IMG/VR virus record: IMGVR_UViG_3300042402_002564
Location: 62,001-126,000 of that record
Direction: 5' to 3' (one strand)
DNA: 64,000 nucleotides
Shown in pieces: positions 4,157 through 64,000 of this stretch. The position numbers and the translations under genes were made by a program. The notes beneath the pieces are model-generated. The model searched no databases. It was not told where the DNA came from and worked only from the letters and a program-made list of their open reading frames with translations. Numbering within the stretch: the first letter of the stretch is position 1; each line of letters opens with the position of its first letter.

Positions 4157-4830
4157 TGCATAGAGTACATGAAGCATTTCCTCTGATTGTTTATCAGGGA
4201 ATGGTGGAATCTCACGATAAAATTAAAATTTATTTAGAAGAACTTCGTGATTATTGGTTTGATGGATATCAAAATGAAAGTCCAGAGTATTCTGGTAGAA
4301 TTTTTGCACATCAAAATAAAATTTATCGTCCATTTTTTGAAGAACTTCGTACTCATGTAGATAATTATTTTGAATATCTTAATGTAGATTATTCAAAACT
4401 TGATTATCATATCATCAAATCTTGGGTAGGATATCATAAAGATGATGAGACTCCATCAATCAAACCTCATAATCACAATGCATCTGATTTGAGTTTTGTT
4501 TTTTATGTTAAAACTGATGAAACTTCGGATAAATTTTGTGTAGCACAAGAAAAAAATCTTAATGAGTGTGTTGGTGATATGTTCACTGAGGCATTGCAAA
4601 AGAATTTAATCACTGGATATAATCGTTATAATTGTAATGTATACAGTATTACTCCAATAGAGGGAAGTGTAGTAATCTTTCCTAGTAAAATTGGGCATTT
4701 TACTCAAAAATTTACTGAGAGGAAGGGTGAACGTCTTGTGATTCCTGGTGATATTCGTGTTACTTTAAAACCAGAACATCCAGATTATCACCAAGGGTCT
4801 ACTCACCCATCCCAGTGGTTACAACTTTAG
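4153..4830 (+). CDS. 2OG-Fe(II) oxygenase-like protein (TIGR02466-like)
   Basis: SW...PHNH...LSFVFY, EGSVVIFPSKIGH and a distal Arg. Confidence 0.7.
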   Translation: MMHRVHEAFPLIVYQGMVESHDKIKIYLEELRDYWFDGYQNESPEYSGRIFAHQNKIYRPFFEELRTHVDNYFEYLNVDYSKLDYHIIKSWVGYHKDDETPSIKPHNHNASDLSFVFYVKTDETSDKFCVAQEKNLNECVGDMFTEALQKNLITGYNRYNCNVYSITPIEGSVVIFPSKIGHFTQKFTERKGERLVIPGDIRVTLKPEHPDYHQGSTHPSQWLQL

Positions 4831-56362: not shown

Positions 56363-57328
56363 ATGAGTAAGACCTATACAGAGAGAATGCAGTATTTAAA
56401 CCGAACTGGTTTGTTCAGTGGTATTACTCATGCCCTTTTAGAAGATAAGGTTAGGAATAATTTTTATAGTGATATTTTAAAAAGTGCAAAAGGTAAACGT
56501 GTTGTTGATGTAGGTTCTGGGAGTGGACTCTTAGGATTCCTAGCATTAAAGCACGGGGCAGAACATGTTACTTTTATAGAACAGGATAAGGTATCATCAA
56601 ATCATATTATGAATGTGATTCGTAGGATGAAGATTGATGAATCAAAGTATCGTGTGATTAATGATGAATTTGTTGCAAGTCGTTGGGATGAATATGAACT
56701 CATTAATCCTGATATGATTGTACATGAAATTATTGGTAATTTTATTTGGAATGAAACAATGACTTGTGCATTTGATGTTCATTTACCAAATGTAGAGATT
56801 ATACCAAGTTCTTATCAATTAAAGTATAGTATTGTTCCACTTACTGATGAAGGATTTAAATTCTTTTGTGATTATGAGAATAGGAATGCAAAGAATAAAC
56901 CAGACCTTGATGTTGATTTAGTAGGGTCTGTATTTGTTGATTATTATACAAAGGTCTTAAGTCTTTATAATACTGAGGTTAGTACAAAACCATCAATATT
57001 GAATCATATAAGAGATAAGGATATTTTAAATGATATCTATTCTAAGGCAATTCATCATTATGACCATGTAGTGAATATTAATGATGAGAATGACTTTAAT
57101 CATAAAAGAAGAGTTAAATTCAAGTTACCTAAAACAAAACGTCCTTATTTAATTCTATGTGAACCATTTGTTCATCATGGTGAGTATACACTTGAGTTTA
57201 AGTCTACCTCATCATTTAATGGTTATAATCAACCTATCTTAGTTCCACCTAATTTAAAGTGTAAGTATTATGAATATGTTTTTGATATTCAACATACTTA
57301 TACGAAGATAGATAATTATTATGCGTAA
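56363..57328 (+). CDS. Class I SAM methyltransferase, PRMT-like
   Basis: LLEDKVRNNFY, VVDVGSGSGLL, FIE and DMIVHEIIGNFIWNE. Confidence 0.8.
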   Translation: MSKTYTERMQYLNRTGLFSGITHALLEDKVRNNFYSDILKSAKGKRVVDVGSGSGLLGFLALKHGAEHVTFIEQDKVSSNHIMNVIRRMKIDESKYRVINDEFVASRWDEYELINPDMIVHEIIGNFIWNETMTCAFDVHLPNVEIIPSSYQLKYSIVPLTDEGFKFFCDYENRNAKNKPDLDVDLVGSVFVDYYTKVLSLYNTEVSTKPSILNHIRDKDILNDIYSKAIHHYDHVVNINDENDFNHKRRVKFKLPKTKRPYLILCEPFVHHGEYTLEFKSTSSFNGYNQPILVPPNLKCKYYEYVFDIQHTYTKIDNYYA

Positions 57329-57338
57329 GATGTTTTAA

Positions 57339-58304
57339 ATGGCAAAATATTCGGAACGAATGATTCATGAGAATCAAAGACCAAATGGTTATAATGGCAT
57401 TTGTTTTGGTCTATTAGAAGATGCCGCAAGAAATAAGTTTTATGATGAATCACTCAAAAGAGCAAAGGGTAAACGTGTTGTTGATGTAGGTTCTGGTAGT
57501 GGATTGTTAGGGTTTTTAGCATTAAAACACGGGGCAAAGCATGTTACTTTTATTGAGCAGAATATTGTATCTTATTCTCATATCAGAAGAGTATCTGAAA
57601 TCATGAAGATTGATAAGTCCCGTTATCGTATCATTAATGATGAATTTGTTGCAAGTCGTTGGGATGAATATGATTTAAAAAACCCCGATATGATTGTACA
57701 TGAATTAGTTGGTAGTTATATTTGGAATGATACAATTGGACAAGCATTTAATCAGTTTATACCAAACGTAGAGATTATACCAAATTTATATGAATTAAAG
57801 TTTAGTATTATTCCTTTAAGCGAATCTGGTTTTAATTACCTTCGTAAGTATCAGAATGAGAAGTCTATTGAGAAGAGAAGATTCCTTGATGTACGTGTTC
57901 CTATTGATAAGAAGTTTATTGCTTATTATGAAAATGTTTTAAATGATTATGATTATGAGATAGGTATCGTTCCTAGAATAATGAGGTCATTGCATGATGA
58001 GTTGTTTAATAAACTATACTCAAAGGATAGAATAGAGTATTATACACATGTATTTGATATTAATAAAGAGAAGGATTATAAGAGTAATACTATTGCATCG
58101 TTTAATTTACCTAAGACAGATAATCCTTATTTAATCTTTATTCATCCGTATCTTCACTCTAAGAAGAATACATTAGACTTTGTAGAGAGTACCTCTTTTA
58201 GTGGTCATCGTAAACCTATACTGATTCCACCTAAAGCGAATTGTAATAAGTTAAGGTATGATGTATTGAAGAATTATATGACGATTGATGATGTAAAAGT
58301 ATAG
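57339..58304 (+). CDS. Class I SAM methyltransferase, PRMT-like paralog
   Basis: LLEDAARNKFY, VVDVGSGSGLL and DMIVHELVGSYIWND; same length as its neighbour (321 aa). Confidence 0.8.
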   Translation: MAKYSERMIHENQRPNGYNGICFGLLEDAARNKFYDESLKRAKGKRVVDVGSGSGLLGFLALKHGAKHVTFIEQNIVSYSHIRRVSEIMKIDKSRYRIINDEFVASRWDEYDLKNPDMIVHELVGSYIWNDTIGQAFNQFIPNVEIIPNLYELKFSIIPLSESGFNYLRKYQNEKSIEKRRFLDVRVPIDKKFIAYYENVLNDYDYEIGIVPRIMRSLHDELFNKLYSKDRIEYYTHVFDINKEKDYKSNTIASFNLPKTDNPYLIFIHPYLHSKKNTLDFVESTSFSGHRKPILIPPKANCNKLRYDVLKNYMTIDDVKV

Positions 58305-58491
58305 TTTTTAATGTTTTTATATTAAAAAATGTATTAAAAAACATATATTAGTGTTTTTAATGTGGTATTATACTAGTGTTATATGGTAGTCTTATACTCT
58401 TATAATCTCTCTTATATCCATTATAATCGTGCCAGATCCTTTGAGTTTTATGCTTATTATACCTCTGGATCCTTGTGATCTTAGGCTGCGT

Positions 58492-58580
58492 ATTATAGCA
58501 CAACCGCGAAAAAATGTCAAGACCCCCGCTCCAAAAACATAAGGACGCGGCATTTTACCATAAGACGCCCCGTGTGTCAA
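58492..58580 (-). promoter_or_regulatory. Two tandem leftward sigma70 promoters
   Basis: On the minus strand: TTGACA-17-TATAAT (58520-58492) and TTGACA-17-TAAAAT (58580-58552). Confidence 0.75.
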
Positions 58581-58588
58581 CTCCCAGA

Positions 58589-58833
58589 ATCTCGACGAGA
58601 ATACACGGTTATATCTCGACTAGATTACATCACGATATAACAGTATCATTATATCTTATAATCTCGACGAGTATATCACATAAGATCTCGTCGAGTCATA
58701 TTACAATATAACATTAGTATTATATCATACAATCTCGACGATACATTGTCACAGTATCATAACATAACTTCATAATTAGTCATAATTATCTCGACGAGTA
58801 TCATATATACCATCAATAAGATCTCGACGAGAT
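58589..58833. repeat. Array of seven ATCTCGWCGAGAT-like palindromes
   Basis: Copies start at 58589, 58613, 58661, 58685, 58732, 58788 and 58821. Confidence 0.92.
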
Positions 58834-58848
58834 GTGCGTCAGATTCCC

Positions 58849-58877
58849 TTGACAGGTCTTGCTGCATCATGTACAAT
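58849..58877 (+). promoter_or_regulatory. Sigma70 promoter
   Basis: TTGACA-17-TACAAT. Confidence 0.7.
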
Positions 58878-58901
58878 GTACACAGTTCGCACAAAGTTCT
58901 C

Positions 58902-60346
58902 ATGGGTAACACCGCATTTATGGAAGCACAAAAGCATAAGTATCGCGTCACTCTAGAACTCGACGTTCTTGGTGACTTCGACCCCCATAATATTAATTGG
59001 GAGAAGCTCTTTGACCTTAATCCTACAGAGAGTGTGAAGTCTTATGTGGAGGACTTGGACTATCCTTGGTAACAGAATATTATACCATAAGGGCATCTAA
59101 TGCGTCAAGTGCTGACGCACCCTTATGTGTATAAGTATTTCAAAGCTGGGGAAGTGACGATGTATTGTCGTCTGCAGGGATACCCTTCCCCTCTTCTGGT
59201 TGTCTGCAAATGATACATCAGAACGCCCGCAAAACCTGCATTGGGTGCCAGTTTGGTGAACCGTCCACCTGTGGCACAAAGACCCAGAAGATGTGGTGTA
59301 CAGTTGCTGGGCAAACGCAATTCGACCGATGATTTTTTTGACATCTACCAATCATGGTTGTGTGTATACTCTGTCTCAAGAGGACGGTGATGAGTTGTAC
59401 TTTGCACCCATCTATGCAAACGGAACTATTAATCTGGAGGAGTTTGCTCCTGTGGATATGAGTACTGTTGACATGGATGACATGGAGGTGTATGATATCC
59501 GTAACCGACTGGTTGCCATGTCCAATATTTGAACTGGCACAAGGGGGTTGACAAGACCCCCACCATCGGTTAAATTTAAATCGTTCACCACTCAACCAAA
59601 CAATGGGAACCCGCTCTCGCATCGGTTACGAACTTCCTGATCACTCCGTGGTTAGTGTTTACTGCCACTGGGATGGTTATGTAGAGAACAACGGTCGCAT
59701 TCTGGTAGAGCACTATCAGAACCGCGATGATGTACAAGAACTGATTGATGGTGGTTCTATGTCTTCTCTTCGCACAACTCATCTGTGGGAGACTGCAGCA
59801 GTACGTGATGAGGATGGTAAGATTGTAGAGAACCCTGATGGTAGTTGGGTTATGTCTCCAACCCGCGATGCACAACCTCTTTATCACACTGAGCGTGGTG
59901 AAGATCTGAATGTGGATCACACTTCATTTGATAAGTTTGTATCAGGTGATTGGGGTGAGGATTATGCTTACCTGTACGACCTCAACGGTAACTGGAAAGC
60001 ATATAAGATTGGGTGGGGACCTGTTGAGCGTGTGGACATCCCCAACTACGTGACAGCGTAGGAACTGGCACACGGGTCCTGGGTCATGACCTAAAACTGA
60101 CCTATACTTCTCTCAGTTCACACCACTCCGCTAATGGCACTCTCAAATCAATCCATGAATAAAATTGCAAGTGCAATGGTTCAAGAGGTTGTTGAGGAAC
60201 TTTATGAGTCCGATGAATGGATGGATTTCCTCTATACTAACATCGGTGGTATCATTGTTGGCAAACTTGGTCAAATTGATGATACTGTCCTGGCAGAATT
60301 GATTATGGGTGTTGCAGACCGTATTAGTCTCAAAGCACACACATAA
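58902..60346 (+). CDS. Early hypothetical genes (58902..59072, ~59329..59532, 59603..60061, 60134..60346)
   Basis: Each sits behind its own promoter. The 59603 ORF has the MGTRSRIG...YCHWDGY motif common in phage early proteins. Confidence 0.6.
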
Positions 60347-60423
60347 TCTCGACTAGATGCGTGTCACGTATCAAATCAATCTCGACGAGATACGTGACAC
60401 ATCATTTGACATCATCTCGATTA
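60346..60423. repeat. Second palindrome cluster plus 12-bp inverted repeat at the tRNA-Leu promoter
   Basis: Copies at 60346, 60379 and a half site at 60414; GTGTCACGTATC/GATACGTGACAC; TTGACA-17-TATCAT at 60406-60434. Confidence 0.85.
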
Positions 60424-60448
60424 TATGTTATCATATAATCAACCACAT

Positions 60449-60532
60449 GGGGATGTGGTGGAATCGGTAGACACAACAGACTTAAAATCTGTCGGAGGCA
60501 ACTCTGTGGGGGTTCAAGTCCCCCCGTCCCTA
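60449..60532 (+). tRNA. trnL: tRNA-Leu (TAA)
   Basis: Acceptor GGGGATG/CGTCCCT, anticodon arm ACAGA-CTTAAAA-TCTGT, long variable arm, GGTTCAAGTCC T-loop, no intron. Confidence 0.92.
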
Positions 60533-60592
60533 TTACCACTCTCAAGGTATATTATACCTGAGGTGGTCCAAACTCTTCTCCTAGAGGCACTC

Positions 60593-60733
60593 ATGCACGA
60601 ATCCACGCTTGATTTGTTTTGCTCTCATGATAATGATAATTTGGATATTGATGATGCTTTCATGTGTGCATTTGAGGAAGAAGCGTCTAAACTGGAAATC
60701 ACAGTAGATTATTATATCGCAGAGTTCCTATAA
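60593..60733 (+). CDS. Small hypothetical protein
   Basis: MHESTLDLF...YYIAEFL with a GAGG RBS. Confidence 0.55.
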   Translation: MHESTLDLFCSHDNDNLDIDDAFMCAFEEEASKLEITVDYYIAEFL

Positions 60734-60814
60734 TATAATGGGGAAGGTGTTTGCCCTAAAAGTTACACTGTTAGATATTAATATTCTATAAAACTAGTGG
60801 GTGGATATTATACA

Positions 60815-60844
60815 GACCTGGGGTGGTGCCCAGGTCTTTTTTTA
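60815..60844 (+). terminator. Rho-independent terminator
   Basis: AGACCTGGG/CCCAGGTCT followed by a T-tract. Confidence 0.75.
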
Positions 60845-60914
60845 TGTTTTGTAACAGACCTCGACAGGGGGTGCTGGTGTGGTATGATTTGAGAGTCAAC
60901 ACGGGAACCTCCCA

Positions 60915-63906
60915 TGTCTCTGGTTTGTGCCTCTGACCTTGCCACCCGCCGCCTGGTGTGGGTGAAGAACAACACCGCCACTGGTGTGCCAGCTGCCGCA
61001 CCGTCCGTCGTCTGGGCAGAGTTCGGTCGCCGTGGTATGATTTGATAGTTCGCAACCGAACCTCATGACCGTCCGCACCAACGTCCTTCCCCTGGATCTC
61101 TGCACTGTCACCCTCACCGAGGCACAGTGGAGCACGATCCGAACTGCTGTGCTCTGCCTCGCTTGTGATTGCCGCATCGCTGGCAAGACCACTGACGCAG
61201 ACTACTATCTGAACGCCTACAACAACCTGAAGGCAGCGATGGGGATGGACGCCTGACCTAGTGGCACAGGGGGACTTGCAAAGGTCCCCCACACCCCCTA
61301 CACTACATTTGTTCATTCAAAAACACCAATGCCAATCAATCTCACCAAAGAAGACCTCAACTTCTACGAAGAAAACTATTCTAATGTCATGCAACTTGGC
61401 ATGATTAACACCTTCGATGAGCGGAGTGATCGGATTCGCTTCCGTTCGATTGCAAAGGCAATTCAGGAGCAAATTGATTCTCTGCAAGTTGAGGATCAAA
61501 AGCGTGTTCCTTTTACAAAGGATGAGATTGTACCTGTTTTTGAAGAGTATCTGTGTTCTTATACTCTCAACGGTCAAGTGAAAGTTTTTGACCGCAAACT
61601 TGCTGCTTCTGGTATTCAATCGTTCCGAAAGAATCCTGTTGCTTCGGTGATGGGTATTCATGGTCAGATTGCATACTACGATCAATACAACGATGTTATC
61701 ACCAAATCGTTTGATCGTGCTGGTAACACTCTGAAGGAGATGCTCCGCCAGTATAATGAAATGATGGGTGTTGAGCGGTTCGCCCTGGACTGATTAACAA
61801 CCCTTATGGGTCAGGGGGTTGACTCCTGACCCATTCCATCCCATACTGTCTTTGTTCACCACTTGAACCTCATGCCCGAAATCACCTGGATTAACGACAT
61901 TCCGATGCCCACAATGTGGGAAGAAGATTATCAAGAAACAGAGTATAAAGATTACGAGGAATCTGATTGGTATAATGACCCTAACTGTGTCATGTCCCGC
62001 CATCATTATTGAACAATGATTGAAGTTCTTGCCGCTTACGTTGTCGGAATGATGCAGGTTGCACCTAATCTCATTCAGACAGATTACCTCAACGAAGACA
62101 AGCAAATCATTTCCGTCACTGAAGTAATCCAAGAGGTTCCACAATCATGACACTCACACACCTCAACTATCAAGAGATTGATGCCCTGATGGCAATTCTT
62201 GAGAGTAGTGATTGGCATTATCTGACTGAACTTGTGGATGCAGACATTCCGCTTCTGTATGACAAACTCACCGAAATGAGGGATGAACTGTGACTGAAAC
62301 TCTCCGACAGTATCACTTCACTGACGAACAGATTGACTTCCTGATGCGAATTGTGCGGAACAATGCACAATTTGAAGATGGTGAAGACCGTGAGTTCATG
62401 GAAGAACTTGCCAATCAAATTGAAGATCAAATCGTCAACCATCCTGACAACGACTGATGACACCTAACGCACCCTACGGTTGCCAAACCTATAAAGATCT
62501 GCTGGTCATGTTACAATCTATGACAGCAGAGCAGTTGGACTGCACTCCTACGGTGTATGATCCTGATGCGGATGAGTATTATCCTATCACCACACTTCTC
62601 ACCGCATCTGACACCAACGACGTGTTAGACTCTGATCATCCCTACCTCTCCTTCTGATGAACCGTTCTGAACTGCAAGACCAACTCATTCAGCAGATGTT
62701 GGATGACATGGATCTCAAGACAATGACCCAACTCTGTTATGATTATCTGGATGAGGGTTATGGTAAGTATTCTGATGAGGAATTGATCACTGAATGTGAA
62801 GAATACTACCCCGATTTGCTTGAAAATCAATAAAGTATAAATTATTACAGGATGGGTTGGTATCCTGATTGTCACCGATACCATAAAACTCTACAGAGTC
62901 TTTCCCGTCCTACCCAATCCCTGAACTGGCACAGACCCCTTGACAGGGTGCCAGGAATCGCTTAATCTAAGAAAACAAGCGGGGGTGAAGCATCCCGCTC
63001 AAAACACTTCACTCAAACCCTTACAATGTGATTTAATTATGTCTCAGTTCGCTTTTACTTCTTCCGCCATCGAAAGCATCTCTGATGTGAATGATGGTAA
63101 AGTGACTATCACCTTCAACGGTGGTCGTGAGTATACCTACGGTGTGCAAGATGTTGAGATGTTCGTGTCTCAACTGAGCACCGTGATTGCCGAACAGCAG
63201 TCCGTGGGTCGTTTTGTAAATAATGCTATCAAAACGGAACAACTGCTCGCAGTGACCGCCGCCTGATAGTATAATACGGGGGGAGGCAACTCCTCCCATC
63301 ACACTACTCCCAAAGAACAATGACTGATTACTTCGACCCTAACGAACAGTTTTCAATCCTTGATCTTATTGATGATTCACAACCTTATGAAGATTTCTCT
63401 CCTGAGGTTAGACAAATGCTTAACGAAGTTGAGTATTACGATGACTACTCTTATGGGGTAGAAGTCGATAATGATTACGACTAATCTCGACTAGTTAATC
63501 ATCATAATCTCGTCGAGATCACGTCATTAAATCTCGACGAGATACGCACACAAATCACTTGAAATTCTTCTCTTTAACATGGAAAATCGTTCGCTCCTGC
63601 TTTCGCTTCTTCGTAAAGGTCAAACTGGTGAAGAAATTCTCCAGATTCTGGAAACTATCATTGGCAGCGATGATGATAGTGATGGTCCTACCCTAAACCC
63701 CATCGATTTCTGATACAATGGAAACTGCATTTGTGACACCCGTATCTAAGAAAGCAAAAAACCGTTTTGCTAATCTTATGGGTGGACTTGATGAGTGTAT
63801 TGTAGAACAACACAAAGGAGACAAAGTGTTCCTCACAAGTGCAAACGGTAAAAACCATTTCTGGGTTAACATTAACAAAGATCCAGACTGGATTGTAGAG
63901 TTCTAA
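60915..63906 (+). CDS. Early region of small hypothetical genes
   Basis: For example 61065..61256, 61329..61793, 62457..62657, 63039..63266 (KTSC-like: SSAIESI...TFNGGREYTY) and 63718..63906. Confidence 0.55.
63484..63543. repeat. Third cluster of three ATCTCGWCGAGAT-like palindromes
   Basis: Copies at 63484, 63507 and 63531 (spacing 23 and 24). Confidence 0.9.
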
Positions 63907-63917
63907 GATTATACCAT

Positions 63918-63943
63918 CCCCCGCCAAGTGCGGGGGTTTTTTT
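63918..63943 (+). terminator. Rho-independent terminator
   Basis: CCCCCGC/GCGGGGG followed by T7. Confidence 0.8.
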
Positions 63944-64000
63944 ATACTTTATAGTATGCTTCCCACCCCTCCCGCCCTCTAGCGTAGGGGCGATGCCCCC

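What the first reader, a model, noticed from the sequence alone, without database searches (positions are those of the whole stretch)
60346..63543. The same palindrome recurs in two satellite clusters, one overlapping the tRNA-Leu promoter
Seen: copies at 60346, 60379 and a half site at 60414 (inside the -35/-10 spacer of the tRNA-Leu promoter), plus 63484, 63507 and 63531 with 23-24 bp spacing again. All are intergenic, and I noticed none in the first 58 kb. A 12-bp inverted repeat brackets the 60379 copy. Inference: dispersed clustered sites over about 5 kb suggest a repressor/looping or parS-like system acting on the early region rather than a simple tandem duplication.
Basis: partly seen in the sequence, partly recalled or inferred. 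Interest (0 to 1): 0.65.

Follow-up and report, generated by a model that had tools for sequence, protein, structure and literature searches.

The report
Cyanophage early-promoter operator palindrome arrays
A 13-base palindrome (ATCTCG-A/T-CGAGAT) occurs only in three clusters next to the strong early promoters of this 246-kb freshwater T4-like cyanophage. The same clusters recur in over 100 related phage contigs, often inside the promoter core, so it is most likely the binding site of a still unidentified phage regulator.

Summary
In the whole 246.5-kb phage genome the palindrome ATCTCG-W-CGAGAT occurs only at window 58589-58833 (7 copies), 60346-60426 (2 copies plus a half site) and 63484-63543 (3 copies). 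All lie in a GC-rich island of small early-type genes.

The same 13-mer forms 3-10-copy arrays in S-SRM01, S-T4 and 104 fetched IMG/VR contigs, although the flanking proteins are only 20-50% identical. In those relatives it repeatedly sits in two places:
- inside the 17-bp spacer of consensus TTGACA/TATAAT promoters;
- directly on the predicted transcription start.

These are repressor-operator positions. In this window the promoter-proximal full site is 56-57 bp upstream of each predicted start, and the tRNA-Leu promoter carries a half site in its spacer.

Host Cyanobiaceae genomes carry the motif only inside genes, so a phage-encoded binder is likely. I could not identify it: two winged-helix families and an AbrB-like family do not match the distribution of the arrays. 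The genome has no ParB or ParA. A replication-origin role remains a rival, because some relatives have DnaA boxes at the same locus. Arrays are also junctions of cassette swaps between strains.

Best reading: operator arrays, a new variant of a known kind.

The parts
58589..58833 (.). Cluster A. Seven palindrome copies start at 58589, 58613, 58661, 58685, 58732, 58788 and 58821. Centre-to-centre spacing is 24, 48, 24, 47, 56 and 33 bp. The stretch is 31% GC and non-coding.
58492..58520 (-). Leftward consensus promoter P_L2: TTGACA-17-TATAAT, 12 of 12 matches, with TG.
58552..58580 (-). Leftward promoter P_L1: TTGACA-17-TAAAAT, 11 of 12 matches, with TG. The first cluster A site is centred about 50 bp upstream of its predicted start.
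58849..58877 (+). Rightward promoter P1: TTGACA-17-TACAAT, 11 of 12 matches. The last two cluster A sites are centred at about -57 and -90.
58920..59072 (+). g1, a 50-aa acidic protein. It is the gene most often found just downstream of the main array (70 loci; 80 of 106 loci).
60346..60358 (.). Cluster B site 1, ATCTCGACTAGAT, centred at about -89 of the tRNA-Leu promoter. It abuts the stop codon of the upstream ORF.
60379..60391 (.). Cluster B site 2, ATCTCGACGAGAT (perfect), centred at about -56.
60361..60400 (.). 12-nt perfect inverted repeat GTGTCACGTATC / GATACGTGACAC bracketing site 2.
60414..60420 (.). Half site ATCTCGA inside the promoter spacer, centred at about -24. It is a degenerate form of the spacer-embedded (Type I) design seen in relatives.
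60406..60434 (+). tRNA-Leu promoter: TTGACA-17-TATCAT, 11 of 12 matches, with extended -10 TG.
60448..60533 (+). tRNA-Leu (anticodon TAA). The transcription unit ends at the terminator at 60814-60837.
63484..63543 (.). Cluster C. Three copies start at 63484, 63507 and 63531, spaced 23 and 24 bp. The last copy is centred about 57 bp upstream of the start predicted for the weak promoter below.
63559..63587 (+). Weak promoter-like site TTGAAA-17-GAAAAT (9 of 12 matches). It overlaps the start of g17, so its function is doubtful.
63579..63906 (+). g17 (63579-63713) and g18 (63718-63906), followed by the terminator at 63918-63936. In 15 related loci an array lies directly upstream of g18.

Best explanation
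The palindrome ATCTCG-W-CGAGAT is the operator of a sequence-specific DNA-binding protein, probably a dimer and most likely encoded by the phage. This protein controls the strong host-type (sigma-70-like) promoters of the early-gene island in a clade of T4-like cyanophages.

Proposed mechanism (inferred):
- Several phased copies let the protein bind cooperatively.
- Copies inside a promoter spacer or on the start site block RNA polymerase.
- The likely use is to shut down or gate immediate-early transcription units once the protein accumulates.

In relatives the controlled units are the small acidic ORF gA plus g1, the tRNA-Met/tRNA-Leu cassette, g18 and g21. In this window the units are P1-g1, the tRNA-Leu promoter and g17-g18.

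What is shown: motif exclusivity, conservation, and the geometry relative to predicted promoters. What is inferred: that a protein binds, that the effect is negative, and that the binder is phage-encoded. In this window only the tRNA-Leu promoter keeps a core (half) site. The full sites sit at -56/-57 and about -90, so a dual activating and repressing role cannot be excluded here.
For: 1. Exclusivity. All 12 full sites and the 1 half site in 246.5 kb lie in three clusters next to promoters.

2. Deep conservation.
- S-SRM01, which is 57-63% identical at the protein level, has 3 clusters and no copy elsewhere in its 240.8 kb.
- S-T4 has 2 clusters.
104 of the fetched loci carry arrays, with 706 sites in all.
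- The g1 proteins next to these arrays are only 19-49% identical to this phage's g1.

3. Core-promoter geometry in relatives.
- The site centre falls at -24, inside the spacer of TTGACA-17-TATAAT, in 23 loci forming 17 sequence groups.
- It falls at -2, overlapping the last bases of the -10 and the start, in 12 loci forming 9 groups.
- A uniform spread would give 5.3 per 5-bp bin, and the neighbouring bins are empty.
- These promoters are already at consensus, so they do not need an activator.

4. The same modules recur. Arrays precede gA/g1, g18, g21 and the tRNA-Met/tRNA-Leu(TAA) cassette.

5. Regular geometry in this window. The promoter-proximal full site is centred 56-57 bp upstream of the predicted start in all three clusters, and the next site at P1 and at the tRNA-Leu promoter lies 33 bp further upstream.

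6. Spacing peaks at 24, 31-33, 39-43 and 60-65 bp. Most of these put sites on one face of the helix.

7. No host regulon. 301 Cyanobiaceae genomes hold about 50 exact 13-mers against about 23 for the reversed control, and 30 of 31 inspected lie inside long ORFs as L-D-E codons.

8. It acts on DNA, not RNA. With a site at -2, transcription starts inside the palindrome. A stem with a 1-nt loop cannot form in RNA.
Against: - No binding protein was identified. The winged-helix protein g24 of this island is absent from S-SRM01, S-T4 and three large array-bearing contigs. A second winged-helix family is present in 2 of 5. An AbrB/MazE-like family is in all 5 positives but also in the array-free P-SSM2 and S-PM2, and it is acidic.
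- All promoters are consensus matches only. There are no mapped transcription starts.
- In this window the full sites are upstream of the core promoters, which is also activator geometry.
- The promoter assigned to cluster C is weak and overlaps the g17 start.
- Metatranscriptome contigs are too sparse to show regulation.
- The model cyanophages S-PM2 and Syn9 lack the motif entirely, so it cannot be a general cyanomyovirus mechanism.
Confidence: 0.55

Rival explanations
1. Replication-origin iterons. The main array (cluster A) would be the loading site of an initiator next to an AT-rich unwinding region, with the flanking promoters supplying activating or priming transcripts. The smaller clusters would be auxiliary or autoregulatory sites.
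For: - Cluster A holds 7 phased sites between divergent consensus promoters, and two leftward promoters fire into a 25% GC stretch.
- In DSL-LC03 the syntenic control region has no palindromes but 7 cyanobacterial-type DnaA boxes (TTTTCCACA).
- Seven array-bearing contigs carry a trio of DnaA boxes plus 21-bp direct repeats about 200 bp upstream of the main array.
- A single theta origin has been predicted for the cyanophage Syn9 (review PMC2984593).
Against: - Sites embedded in promoter spacers and on start sites, sites inside the gA coding sequence, and arrays directly before g18, g21 and tRNAs fit gene control better.
- This genome has no DnaA-box cluster.
- No initiator-like protein co-occurs with the arrays.
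- GC skew is monotonic and uninformative.
- The DnaA boxes may mark an origin that is merely adjacent to the operators.
Confidence: 0.13
2. Upstream activator sites. A phage or host protein bound at about -57 and -90 would boost the early and tRNA promoters, as class I activators or Fis-type upstream sites do.
For: In this window the proximal full site is centred at -56/-57 in all three clusters, and the next site at P1 and at the tRNA-Leu promoter is about 33 bp further upstream. That is upstream of the core promoter.
Against: - The promoters concerned already match consensus at 11-12 of 12 positions.
- In relatives the sites lie in the spacer or on the start, where bound proteins normally block RNA polymerase.
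- No host regulon carries this site.
Confidence: 0.1
3. The arrays are mainly recombination substrates. As short conserved repeats flanking gene cassettes, they would drive modular shuffling of the hyperplastic early region, as proposed for PeSL elements, with no dedicated binding protein.
For: - Co-occurring strains in lake metagenomes have joints exactly at arrays: 60042 to 63525 and 62013 to 63531, plus an extra site copy at 63530/63552.
- The genes downstream of arrays differ between phages.
- Arrays turn over by single sites.
- PeSLs behave this way (PMC2839356, PMC4122927).
Against: - Recombination needs only similarity. It does not explain a palindromic 13-mer kept unchanged across phages whose proteins are 20-50% identical.
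- It does not explain the fixed registers at -24 and -2 in consensus promoters.
- Shuffling is more likely a by-product of the repeats.
Confidence: 0.1
4. A parS-like centromere, a packaging (pac) site, an RNA hairpin element, or merely codon repeats of an acidic protein.
For: - Clustered palindromes resemble parS and pac arrays.
- In most relatives GAT-CTC-GAC-GAG encodes D-L-D-E within the small acidic ORF gA.
Against: - The complete genome has no ParB_N or ParA-type domain.
- Sites occur in other frames, in both orientations and in non-coding DNA. This genome lacks gA yet keeps 7 sites.
- As RNA, the palindrome would form at most a 5-bp stem with a 3-nt loop.
- Some sites are not transcribed as a whole.
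- There is no Rfam match.
Confidence: 0.05

Closest known systems
Phage operator arrays with cooperative repressors (lambda OR/OL with CI or Cro; phi29 p4/p6 at the A2b/A2c/A3 promoters). Comparison from general knowledge.
   Same: Short palindromic sites occur in several copies, overlap the core elements of strong sigma-70-type early promoters, and are also placed upstream and at a distance. Divergent promoters share one control region.
   Different: - The host phage here is a strictly lytic T4-like myovirus.
- The site is a compact 13-mer whose conserved bases are contiguous.
- Arrays reach 10 copies and extend into a coding sequence in relatives.
- No repressor gene is identified, and none of the known repressor families was found next to the arrays.
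Aca-type autoregulators of anti-CRISPR operons (inverted repeats in very strong early promoters). Comparison from general knowledge.
   Same: The logic is the same: consensus-strength immediate-early promoters for small accessory genes carry palindromic operators within the core promoter so that they can be damped after an initial burst.
   Different: Aca systems have one or two inverted repeats and an HTH gene in the same operon. Here there are arrays of 3-10 sites, several regulated units including tRNAs, and no HTH gene consistently in the operon.
PeSL elements of T4-type phages (Arbiol et al. 2010, PMC2839356; Comeau et al. 2014, PMC4122927)
   Same: They are repeated regulatory motifs with near-consensus TTGACA-N17-TATAAT promoters in hyperplastic regions full of small ORFs, and they act as junctions of cassette exchange between close relatives.
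   Different: A PeSL is one stem-loop terminator plus one promoter. The element here is a 13-bp palindrome in multi-copy arrays, placed inside or beside the promoter. Cyanophages are not mentioned in the text of the 2014 paper (term search). The GC-rich hairpin-plus-promoter units elsewhere in this island are the closer PeSL analogues.
Iteron-type origins (for example lambda ori bound by O protein, or iteron plasmids with DnaA boxes). Comparison from general knowledge.
   Same: There are arrays of phased sites with dyad symmetry next to AT-rich DNA. DnaA boxes lie at the same locus in some relatives, and flanking transcription is present.
   Different: Sites also sit in promoter cores and before several unrelated genes. 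No initiator gene is present, and this genome has no DnaA boxes.
T4 MotA boxes at middle promoters. Comparison from general knowledge; review PMC2984593.
   Same: Both are phage-specific DNA elements in the -30 region of promoters that set the timing of transcription in a T4-type phage. Cyanomyoviruses lack MotA and AsiA, and their early-to-middle switch is unexplained.
   Different: A MotA box replaces the -35 element, is asymmetric and occurs singly. Here the -35 hexamer is intact and at consensus, and the site is a multi-copy palindrome.

Membership tests
Repressor-operator system | A specific DNA motif confined to regulatory regions and over-represented against chance | tested here: met
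   The window has 16 strand-hits against 0.31 expected. In 246.5 kb all hits lie in 3 promoter-linked clusters.
Repressor-operator system | Sites overlap core promoter elements (spacer, -10, start) | tested here: met
   In relatives the site centre is at -24 in 23 loci and at -2 in 12 loci. In this window only the half site in the tRNA-Leu promoter spacer qualifies. All promoters are predictions.
Repressor-operator system | A cognate DNA-binding protein is identified | tested here: not met
   The distributions of the g24 winged-helix, second winged-helix, AbrB-like and zinc-ribbon families do not match that of the arrays. The g1 model shows no DNA-binding fold.
Repressor-operator system | Binding lowers transcription | not testable with these tools
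   This needs reporter assays or time-course mapping of transcription starts in S-T4 or S-SRM01 infections.
parS/ParB partition system | ParB (ParB_N domain) and ParA ATPase genes in the same replicon | tested here: not met
   PF02195 and PF13614 give no match in the complete genome, while the control genomes do match.
parS/ParB partition system | Resemblance to the 16-bp parS consensus (TGTTNCACGTGAAACA, quoted from general knowledge) | tested here: not met
   The motif is ATCTCG-W-CGAGAT and bears no resemblance to that consensus.
Iteron or DnaA-type replication origin | Initiator binding sites beside an AT-rich unwinding element | tested here: inconclusive
   A 25% GC stretch lies beside cluster A, and relatives have DnaA boxes at the same locus. 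This genome has no DnaA-box cluster.
Iteron or DnaA-type replication origin | Replication starts there | not testable with these tools
   GC skew is monotonic. Marker-frequency analysis or 2D gels are needed.
PeSL (promoter-early stem-loop) cassettes | One stem-loop terminator directly followed by one early promoter, repeated between ORFs | tested here: not met
   The palindrome arrays have no stable stem-loop or terminator. The only terminators predicted nearby are at 60814-60837 and 63918-63936. Other intergenic units of the island do fit this description.
PeSL (promoter-early stem-loop) cassettes | Junctions of insertions, deletions and replacements between close relatives | tested here: met
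   Metagenome contigs show joints at 60042 to 63525 and 62013 to 63531, and an extra site copy.
Binding sites of a host transcription factor | The same motif in intergenic regions of host genomes | tested here: not met
   In 301 Cyanobiaceae genomes, 30 of 31 inspected 13-mers lie inside long ORFs, and the excess over the reversed control is only about 2-fold.

The most novel reading that the evidence does not exclude
A clade of lytic T4-like cyanophages (this lake phage, S-SRM01, S-T4 and more than 100 uncultured contigs) has a dedicated and so far undescribed early-promoter switch. An unidentified phage protein, possibly of a new family, would bind ATCTCG-W-CGAGAT arrays to gate immediate-early transcription, including the phage tRNA-Met/tRNA-Leu cassette. 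That would fill the place of the MotA/AsiA system these phages lack. The same arrays would double as the breakpoints at which early-gene cassettes are exchanged.
Probability: 0.4. Interest if true: 0.7.

Novelty: new variant of a known kind. Interest (0 to 1): 0.6.

Why it matters
How T4-like cyanophages time early and middle transcription without MotA and AsiA is an acknowledged open question (review PMC2984593). A conserved operator sitting in consensus early promoters gives a concrete cis element to work from. Two cultured phage-host pairs carry it: S-T4 with Synechococcus WH7803, and S-SRM01 with KCZYC6. The regulator could therefore be fished out and the switch tested.

The arrays also mark where early-gene cassettes are swapped between co-occurring lake strains. 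They contain a small acidic ORF that is unannotated in the isolates.

The motif is absent from the usual model phages (S-PM2, Syn9, P-SSM2, S-CRM01). That probably explains why it has gone unnoticed, and it limits how far the mechanism can be generalised.

Tried and rejected
- Host transcription factor or decoy idea: rejected. The motif is not intergenic in 301 Cyanobiaceae genomes.
- parS: rejected. There is no ParB or ParA.
- Candidate binders by phyletic pattern. g24 winged-helix (model pLDDT 87, MarR/TFE-like fold) is absent from 5 of 5 other array-bearing records and has no hit in isolate phages. The second winged-helix family (unannotated ORF in S-SRM01) is present in 2 of 5. The AbrB/MazE-like 57-aa family is in 5 of 5 positives but also in array-free phages, and it is acidic. 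The zinc-ribbon ORF upstream of the S-T4 array is absent from this genome.
- g1 structure model: confident (pLDDT 88) but almost without secondary structure, and Foldseek found no match.
- The protein atlas gave nothing informative for g18.
- Pfam and PHROGs gave no function for the island ORFs.
- RNA-level reading: there is no Rfam family apart from the tRNA, and the leftward transcript region is not unusually structured (z = -1.2).
- Reads: metatranscriptome contigs cover parts of the island but are too sparse, and unstranded, to show starts or regulation.
- Literature: full-text searches for the motif string and for cyanophage palindromes, iterons or promoters found no description. A term search of the S-SRM01 paper found no mention of palindromes or promoters, and its only mentions of repeats are terminal repeats.
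- GC skew is uninformative for an origin.
- Complex prediction and the two large protein searches were not used, because no claim here rests on them.

Full report
**Context**

The window is bases 62001-126000 of a single 246,502-bp contig. IMG/VR classes the contig as complete, with terminal repeats. Its gene content is that of a T4-like cyanomyovirus:
- a tail-fibre protein with an S74 chaperone domain, RNA ligases, a carbamoyltransferase and a 2OG oxygenase;
- a helicase 57% identical to that of Synechococcus phage S-SRM01, family Kyanoviridae;
- a psbA gene 91-93% identical to Cyanobium and Synechococcus genomes.

Near-identical DNA is present in 18 lake or freshwater metagenome runs.

From window 58481 to genome position 128700 there is an island of 45.9% GC, against 33.4% for the rest of the genome. 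It holds about 26 small plus-strand ORFs, almost all without a Pfam or PHROG function. Host-type promoters punctuate it.

**Checking the observation**

The 12-nt inverted repeat around the 60379 copy is perfect, and the spacings are 33/35 bp and 23/24 bp. The half site ATCTCGA at 60414-60420 lies in the 17-bp spacer of a TTGACA...TATCAT promoter (11 of 12 matches, with an extended -10 TG). That promoter ends 14 bp before tRNA-Leu(TAA).

The motif is far beyond chance: 16 strand-hits against 0.31 expected, with 0 of 100 shuffles reaching that. In the whole genome, every hit that keeps the CTCG-W-CGAG core lies in three clusters:
- cluster A, 7 copies at 58589-58833, outside the finding's coordinates;
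- cluster B, 2 copies plus a half site at 60346-60426;
- cluster C, 3 copies at 63484-63543.

It is not met. The sites are non-coding here, because the ORFs overlapping cluster A are singletons among 105 related loci.

**Anatomy in the window**

Cluster A fills the 270 bp between a leftward promoter (58580..58552, 11 of 12 matches) and the rightward promoter P1 (58849-58877, 11 of 12 matches), which precedes g1. A second, perfect leftward promoter lies at 58520..58492.

In all three clusters the promoter-proximal full site is centred 21-22 bp upstream of a -35-type hexamer: TTGACA at 58849, TTGACA at 60406 and TTGAAA at 63559. That is 56-57 bp upstream of the predicted start. At P1 and at the tRNA-Leu promoter the next site lies 33 bp further upstream. 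The promoter assigned to cluster C is weak (9 of 12 matches) and overlaps the g17 start, so that assignment is doubtful.

**Comparative evidence**

S-SRM01 carries the same 13-mer in three clusters of the syntenic island and nowhere else in its 240.8 kb. S-T4 has two clusters.

My own estimate of the chance expectation is about a dozen. Of the fetched loci, 104 with phage-like GC content carry arrays of 3-10 sites:
- 706 sites in all;
- 21 loci have two to four arrays, a median of 1.9 kb apart.

The consensus is aATCTCG[A/T]CGAGAt. The central base is A on the gene-sense strand twice as often as T. Spacing peaks at 24, 31-33, 39-43 and 60-65 bp.

The neighbouring g1 proteins are only 19-49% identical to this phage's g1, so the DNA motif is conserved much more strongly than its surroundings. 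In the nearest relatives (L063, L037) the array upstream of g17 again has three sites, but shifted by one site. That pattern indicates turnover under selection for site number.

The model phages S-PM2 and Syn9 have no copy. P-SSM2 and S-CRM01 have one isolated copy each. DSL-LC03 has none in the fetched 16.5-kb syntenic locus.

**What the sites are attached to**

The genes directly downstream of arrays are:
- g1, in 70 loci;
- g18, in 15 loci;
- a g21-like gene, in 12 loci;
- a tRNA-Met/tRNA-Leu(TAA) cassette, in L010, L020, L060, L101 and L108. This is the same association as cluster B here.

I scored strict sigma-70-type promoter matches near arrays and measured site positions relative to the predicted start. 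Two sharp peaks appear:
- Type I: the palindrome lies inside the 17-bp spacer of TTGACA...TATAAT, centred at -24. It occurs in 23 loci forming 17 sequence groups.
- Type II: TTGACA-17-TAGAAT, with the palindrome beginning in the last two bases of the -10 hexamer, centred at -2. It occurs in 12 loci forming 9 groups.

A uniform spread would give 5.3 per 5-bp bin, and the neighbouring bins are empty.

Type I promoters mostly drive a small acidic ORF that I call gA (17 of 23), or tRNAs. They often have a further site between +10 and +25. Sites in the spacer and on the start of promoters that already match consensus are the classical geometry of repression. The tRNA-Leu promoter of this window is a degenerate Type I promoter.

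**A twist in relatives**

In 79 loci the 3' part of the main array lies within gA, typically MYDDYD...DLDE...LAY(R/K)HYA. There GAT-CTC-GAC-GAG is read as D-L-D-E. Third-codon-position variation, R/K replacements and TGA/TAA stop exchanges show that gA is a real coding sequence.

Sites also occur upstream of gA, in other frames, in both orientations, and before unrelated genes. This genome has lost gA yet keeps seven sites. The DNA motif is therefore primary and the coding use secondary.

**Who binds**

A host factor is unlikely. 301 Cyanobiaceae genomes hold about 50 exact 13-mers against about 23 for the reversed control. Of 31 inspected, 30 lie inside long ORFs, many in one conserved gene as LG(N/H)LDEMGI.

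None of the phage candidates fits the distribution of the arrays:
- The island's 86-aa protein g24 folds as a winged helix (pLDDT 87; MarR, TFE-alpha and Z-alpha type matches). It is missing from S-SRM01, S-T4 and three large array-bearing contigs.
- A second winged-helix family, which includes an unannotated ORF in S-SRM01, is in 2 of 5.
- An AbrB/MazE-like 57-aa family is in all five positives. It is also in P-SSM2 and S-PM2, is acidic, and in this genome lies 29 kb away.
- A zinc-ribbon ORF next to the S-T4 array is absent here.
- g1 gives a confident model without a recognisable fold.

The binder remains unidentified.

**Rival readings**

*Origin of replication.* In DSL-LC03 the syntenic control region has seven TTTTCCACA boxes instead of palindromes. 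From general knowledge, that sequence is the cyanobacterial DnaA-box type. Seven array-bearing contigs have a DnaA-box trio and 21-bp direct repeats about 200 bp upstream of the main array, transcribed by a conserved leftward promoter. An origin may therefore lie in or beside this control region. However, this genome has no DnaA-box cluster. The core-promoter positions of the palindromes, and their presence before several genes, fit gene control better.

*Activator.* The -57 and -90 geometry in this window allows it. The promoters are already at consensus strength, which argues against a need for activation.

*Recombination substrate.* Contigs from co-occurring strains join 60042 to 63525 and 62013 to 63531, and one adds an extra site copy at 63530/63552. 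Arrays are therefore cassette junctions, as described for PeSLs (PMC2839356, PMC4122927). Similarity-driven recombination does not explain a fixed palindrome in fixed promoter registers, so I regard shuffling as a consequence rather than the function.

*parS.* There is no ParB_N or ParA-type domain.

*RNA element.* There is no Rfam hit other than the tRNA. The palindrome cannot form a stable RNA hairpin, and sites at -2 are not transcribed as a whole.

**Novelty**

Full-text searches for the motif and for related keywords found no description. A term search of the S-SRM01 genome paper found no mention of palindromes or promoters, and its only mentions of repeats are terminal repeats. A review states that the mechanism of early and middle transcription in cyanomyoviruses is unclear.

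Operator arrays as such are well known. New here are the setting (lytic T4-like cyanophages), the motif, the array architecture that extends into a coding sequence, and the link to phage tRNA promoters and cassette junctions. I class it as a new variant of a known kind.

**Limits**

- All promoters are consensus predictions.
- No binding or expression data exist. The two metatranscriptome runs give only sparse, unstranded contigs, with none over clusters A or C.
- Many IMG/VR loci are related to one another, although I counted distinct sequence groups.
- Phyletic profiling covered only a handful of whole genomes.

**Verdict**

Interest is 0.6.

Noticed in passing
window 58481-64000 and on to genome position 128700 (L001 2481-10700): An 8.2-kb island of 45.9% GC sits in a 33.4% GC genome. 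It holds about 26 small plus-strand ORFs and begins exactly at the palindrome control region. It looks like a host-adapted or horizontally exchanged early-gene module. S-SRM01 has the same composition shift.
   Followed up: partly
window 59531-59576, 60064-60110, 61261-61310, 61800-61850, 62925-62965: These intergenic units start with (A)CTGGCAC and place a -35-type hexamer in the loop of a 6-8-bp GC-rich hairpin, followed by a conserved leader (GTTCACCAC). They resemble PeSL promoter/stem-loop cassettes of other T4-type phages.
   Followed up: no
L001 8040-9880 (genome 126040-127880, beyond the window): The second half of the island uses a different repeated intergenic unit: a GC hairpin followed by CCTGTAGGATACT (or TAGAAT) and a conserved 'CTCAAGCGnGGCAAACGGACC' leader. 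This may be a second promoter class.
   Followed up: no
window 58492-58580, minus strand: Two consensus promoters (12 of 12 and 11 of 12 matches, both with TG) point leftward, against the direction of nearly all genes. They fire into a 25% GC non-coding stretch (58305-58480) with TCTTATA repeats. There is no ORF, no Rfam hit and no unusual RNA structure (z = -1.2). This could be a priming or activating transcript for an origin, or a non-coding RNA.
   Followed up: partly
L003 10847-11310 (Synechococcus phage DSL-LC03, OR003938): Seven TTTTCCACA DnaA-type boxes, in both orientations, lie in the syntenic control region of a phage that lacks the palindromes there. The flanks share conserved blocks with this phage and with S-SRM01 (an AT-rich block, ATTCTCA...TGAGAAT, and CATAAGAC repeats).
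   Followed up: partly
L023 ~4319-4367, L105 10842-10883, L053 10262-10303 and four more loci: A trio of DnaA-type boxes plus three or four 21-bp direct repeats (TTCTTATTAAATGCCTCTGA) lies about 200 bp upstream of the main palindrome array. A conserved leftward promoter (TTGACAAACTGCGCGTCTTATG..TACGCT) transcribes them.
   Followed up: partly
L002 6920-7057 (S-SRM01); L240 2695-2844, minus strand (S-T4); 79 IMG/VR loci: A conserved 45-65-aa acidic, tyrosine-rich ORF (MYDDYD..DLDE..LAY(R/K)HYA) is encoded by the array itself. It is not annotated in either isolate and is absent from this genome. It might be a DNA mimic; this was not tested.
   Followed up: partly
L002 11604-11906 (S-SRM01 record 90334-90636): An unannotated 100-aa ORF has weak MarR/IclR-type helix-turn-helix matches. 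Homologues occur in five IMG/VR loci.
   Followed up: partly
L002 12291-13000 (S-SRM01): An HNH endonuclease gene on the opposite strand lies directly after the third palindrome cluster. It is followed by a GC-rich, possibly structured stretch of about 200 bp. This may be a mobile insertion.
   Followed up: no
window 56363-58304: Two tandem paralogous 321-aa methyltransferase-like genes (RsmD/MTS-type matches) lie immediately upstream of the control region.
   Followed up: no
window 60042-63531: Lake metagenome contigs from co-occurring strains lack or replace the cassettes between arrays. The joints are 60042 to 63525, 62013 to 63531 and 62286 to 62653, and one variant has an extra palindrome copy.
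   Followed up: partly
L160 (NYUL01000008.1, a MAG labelled Gammaproteobacteria): This contig carries a psbA gene 93% identical to the phage's psbA. It is probably a mis-binned cyanophage or cyanobacterial contig.
   Followed up: no
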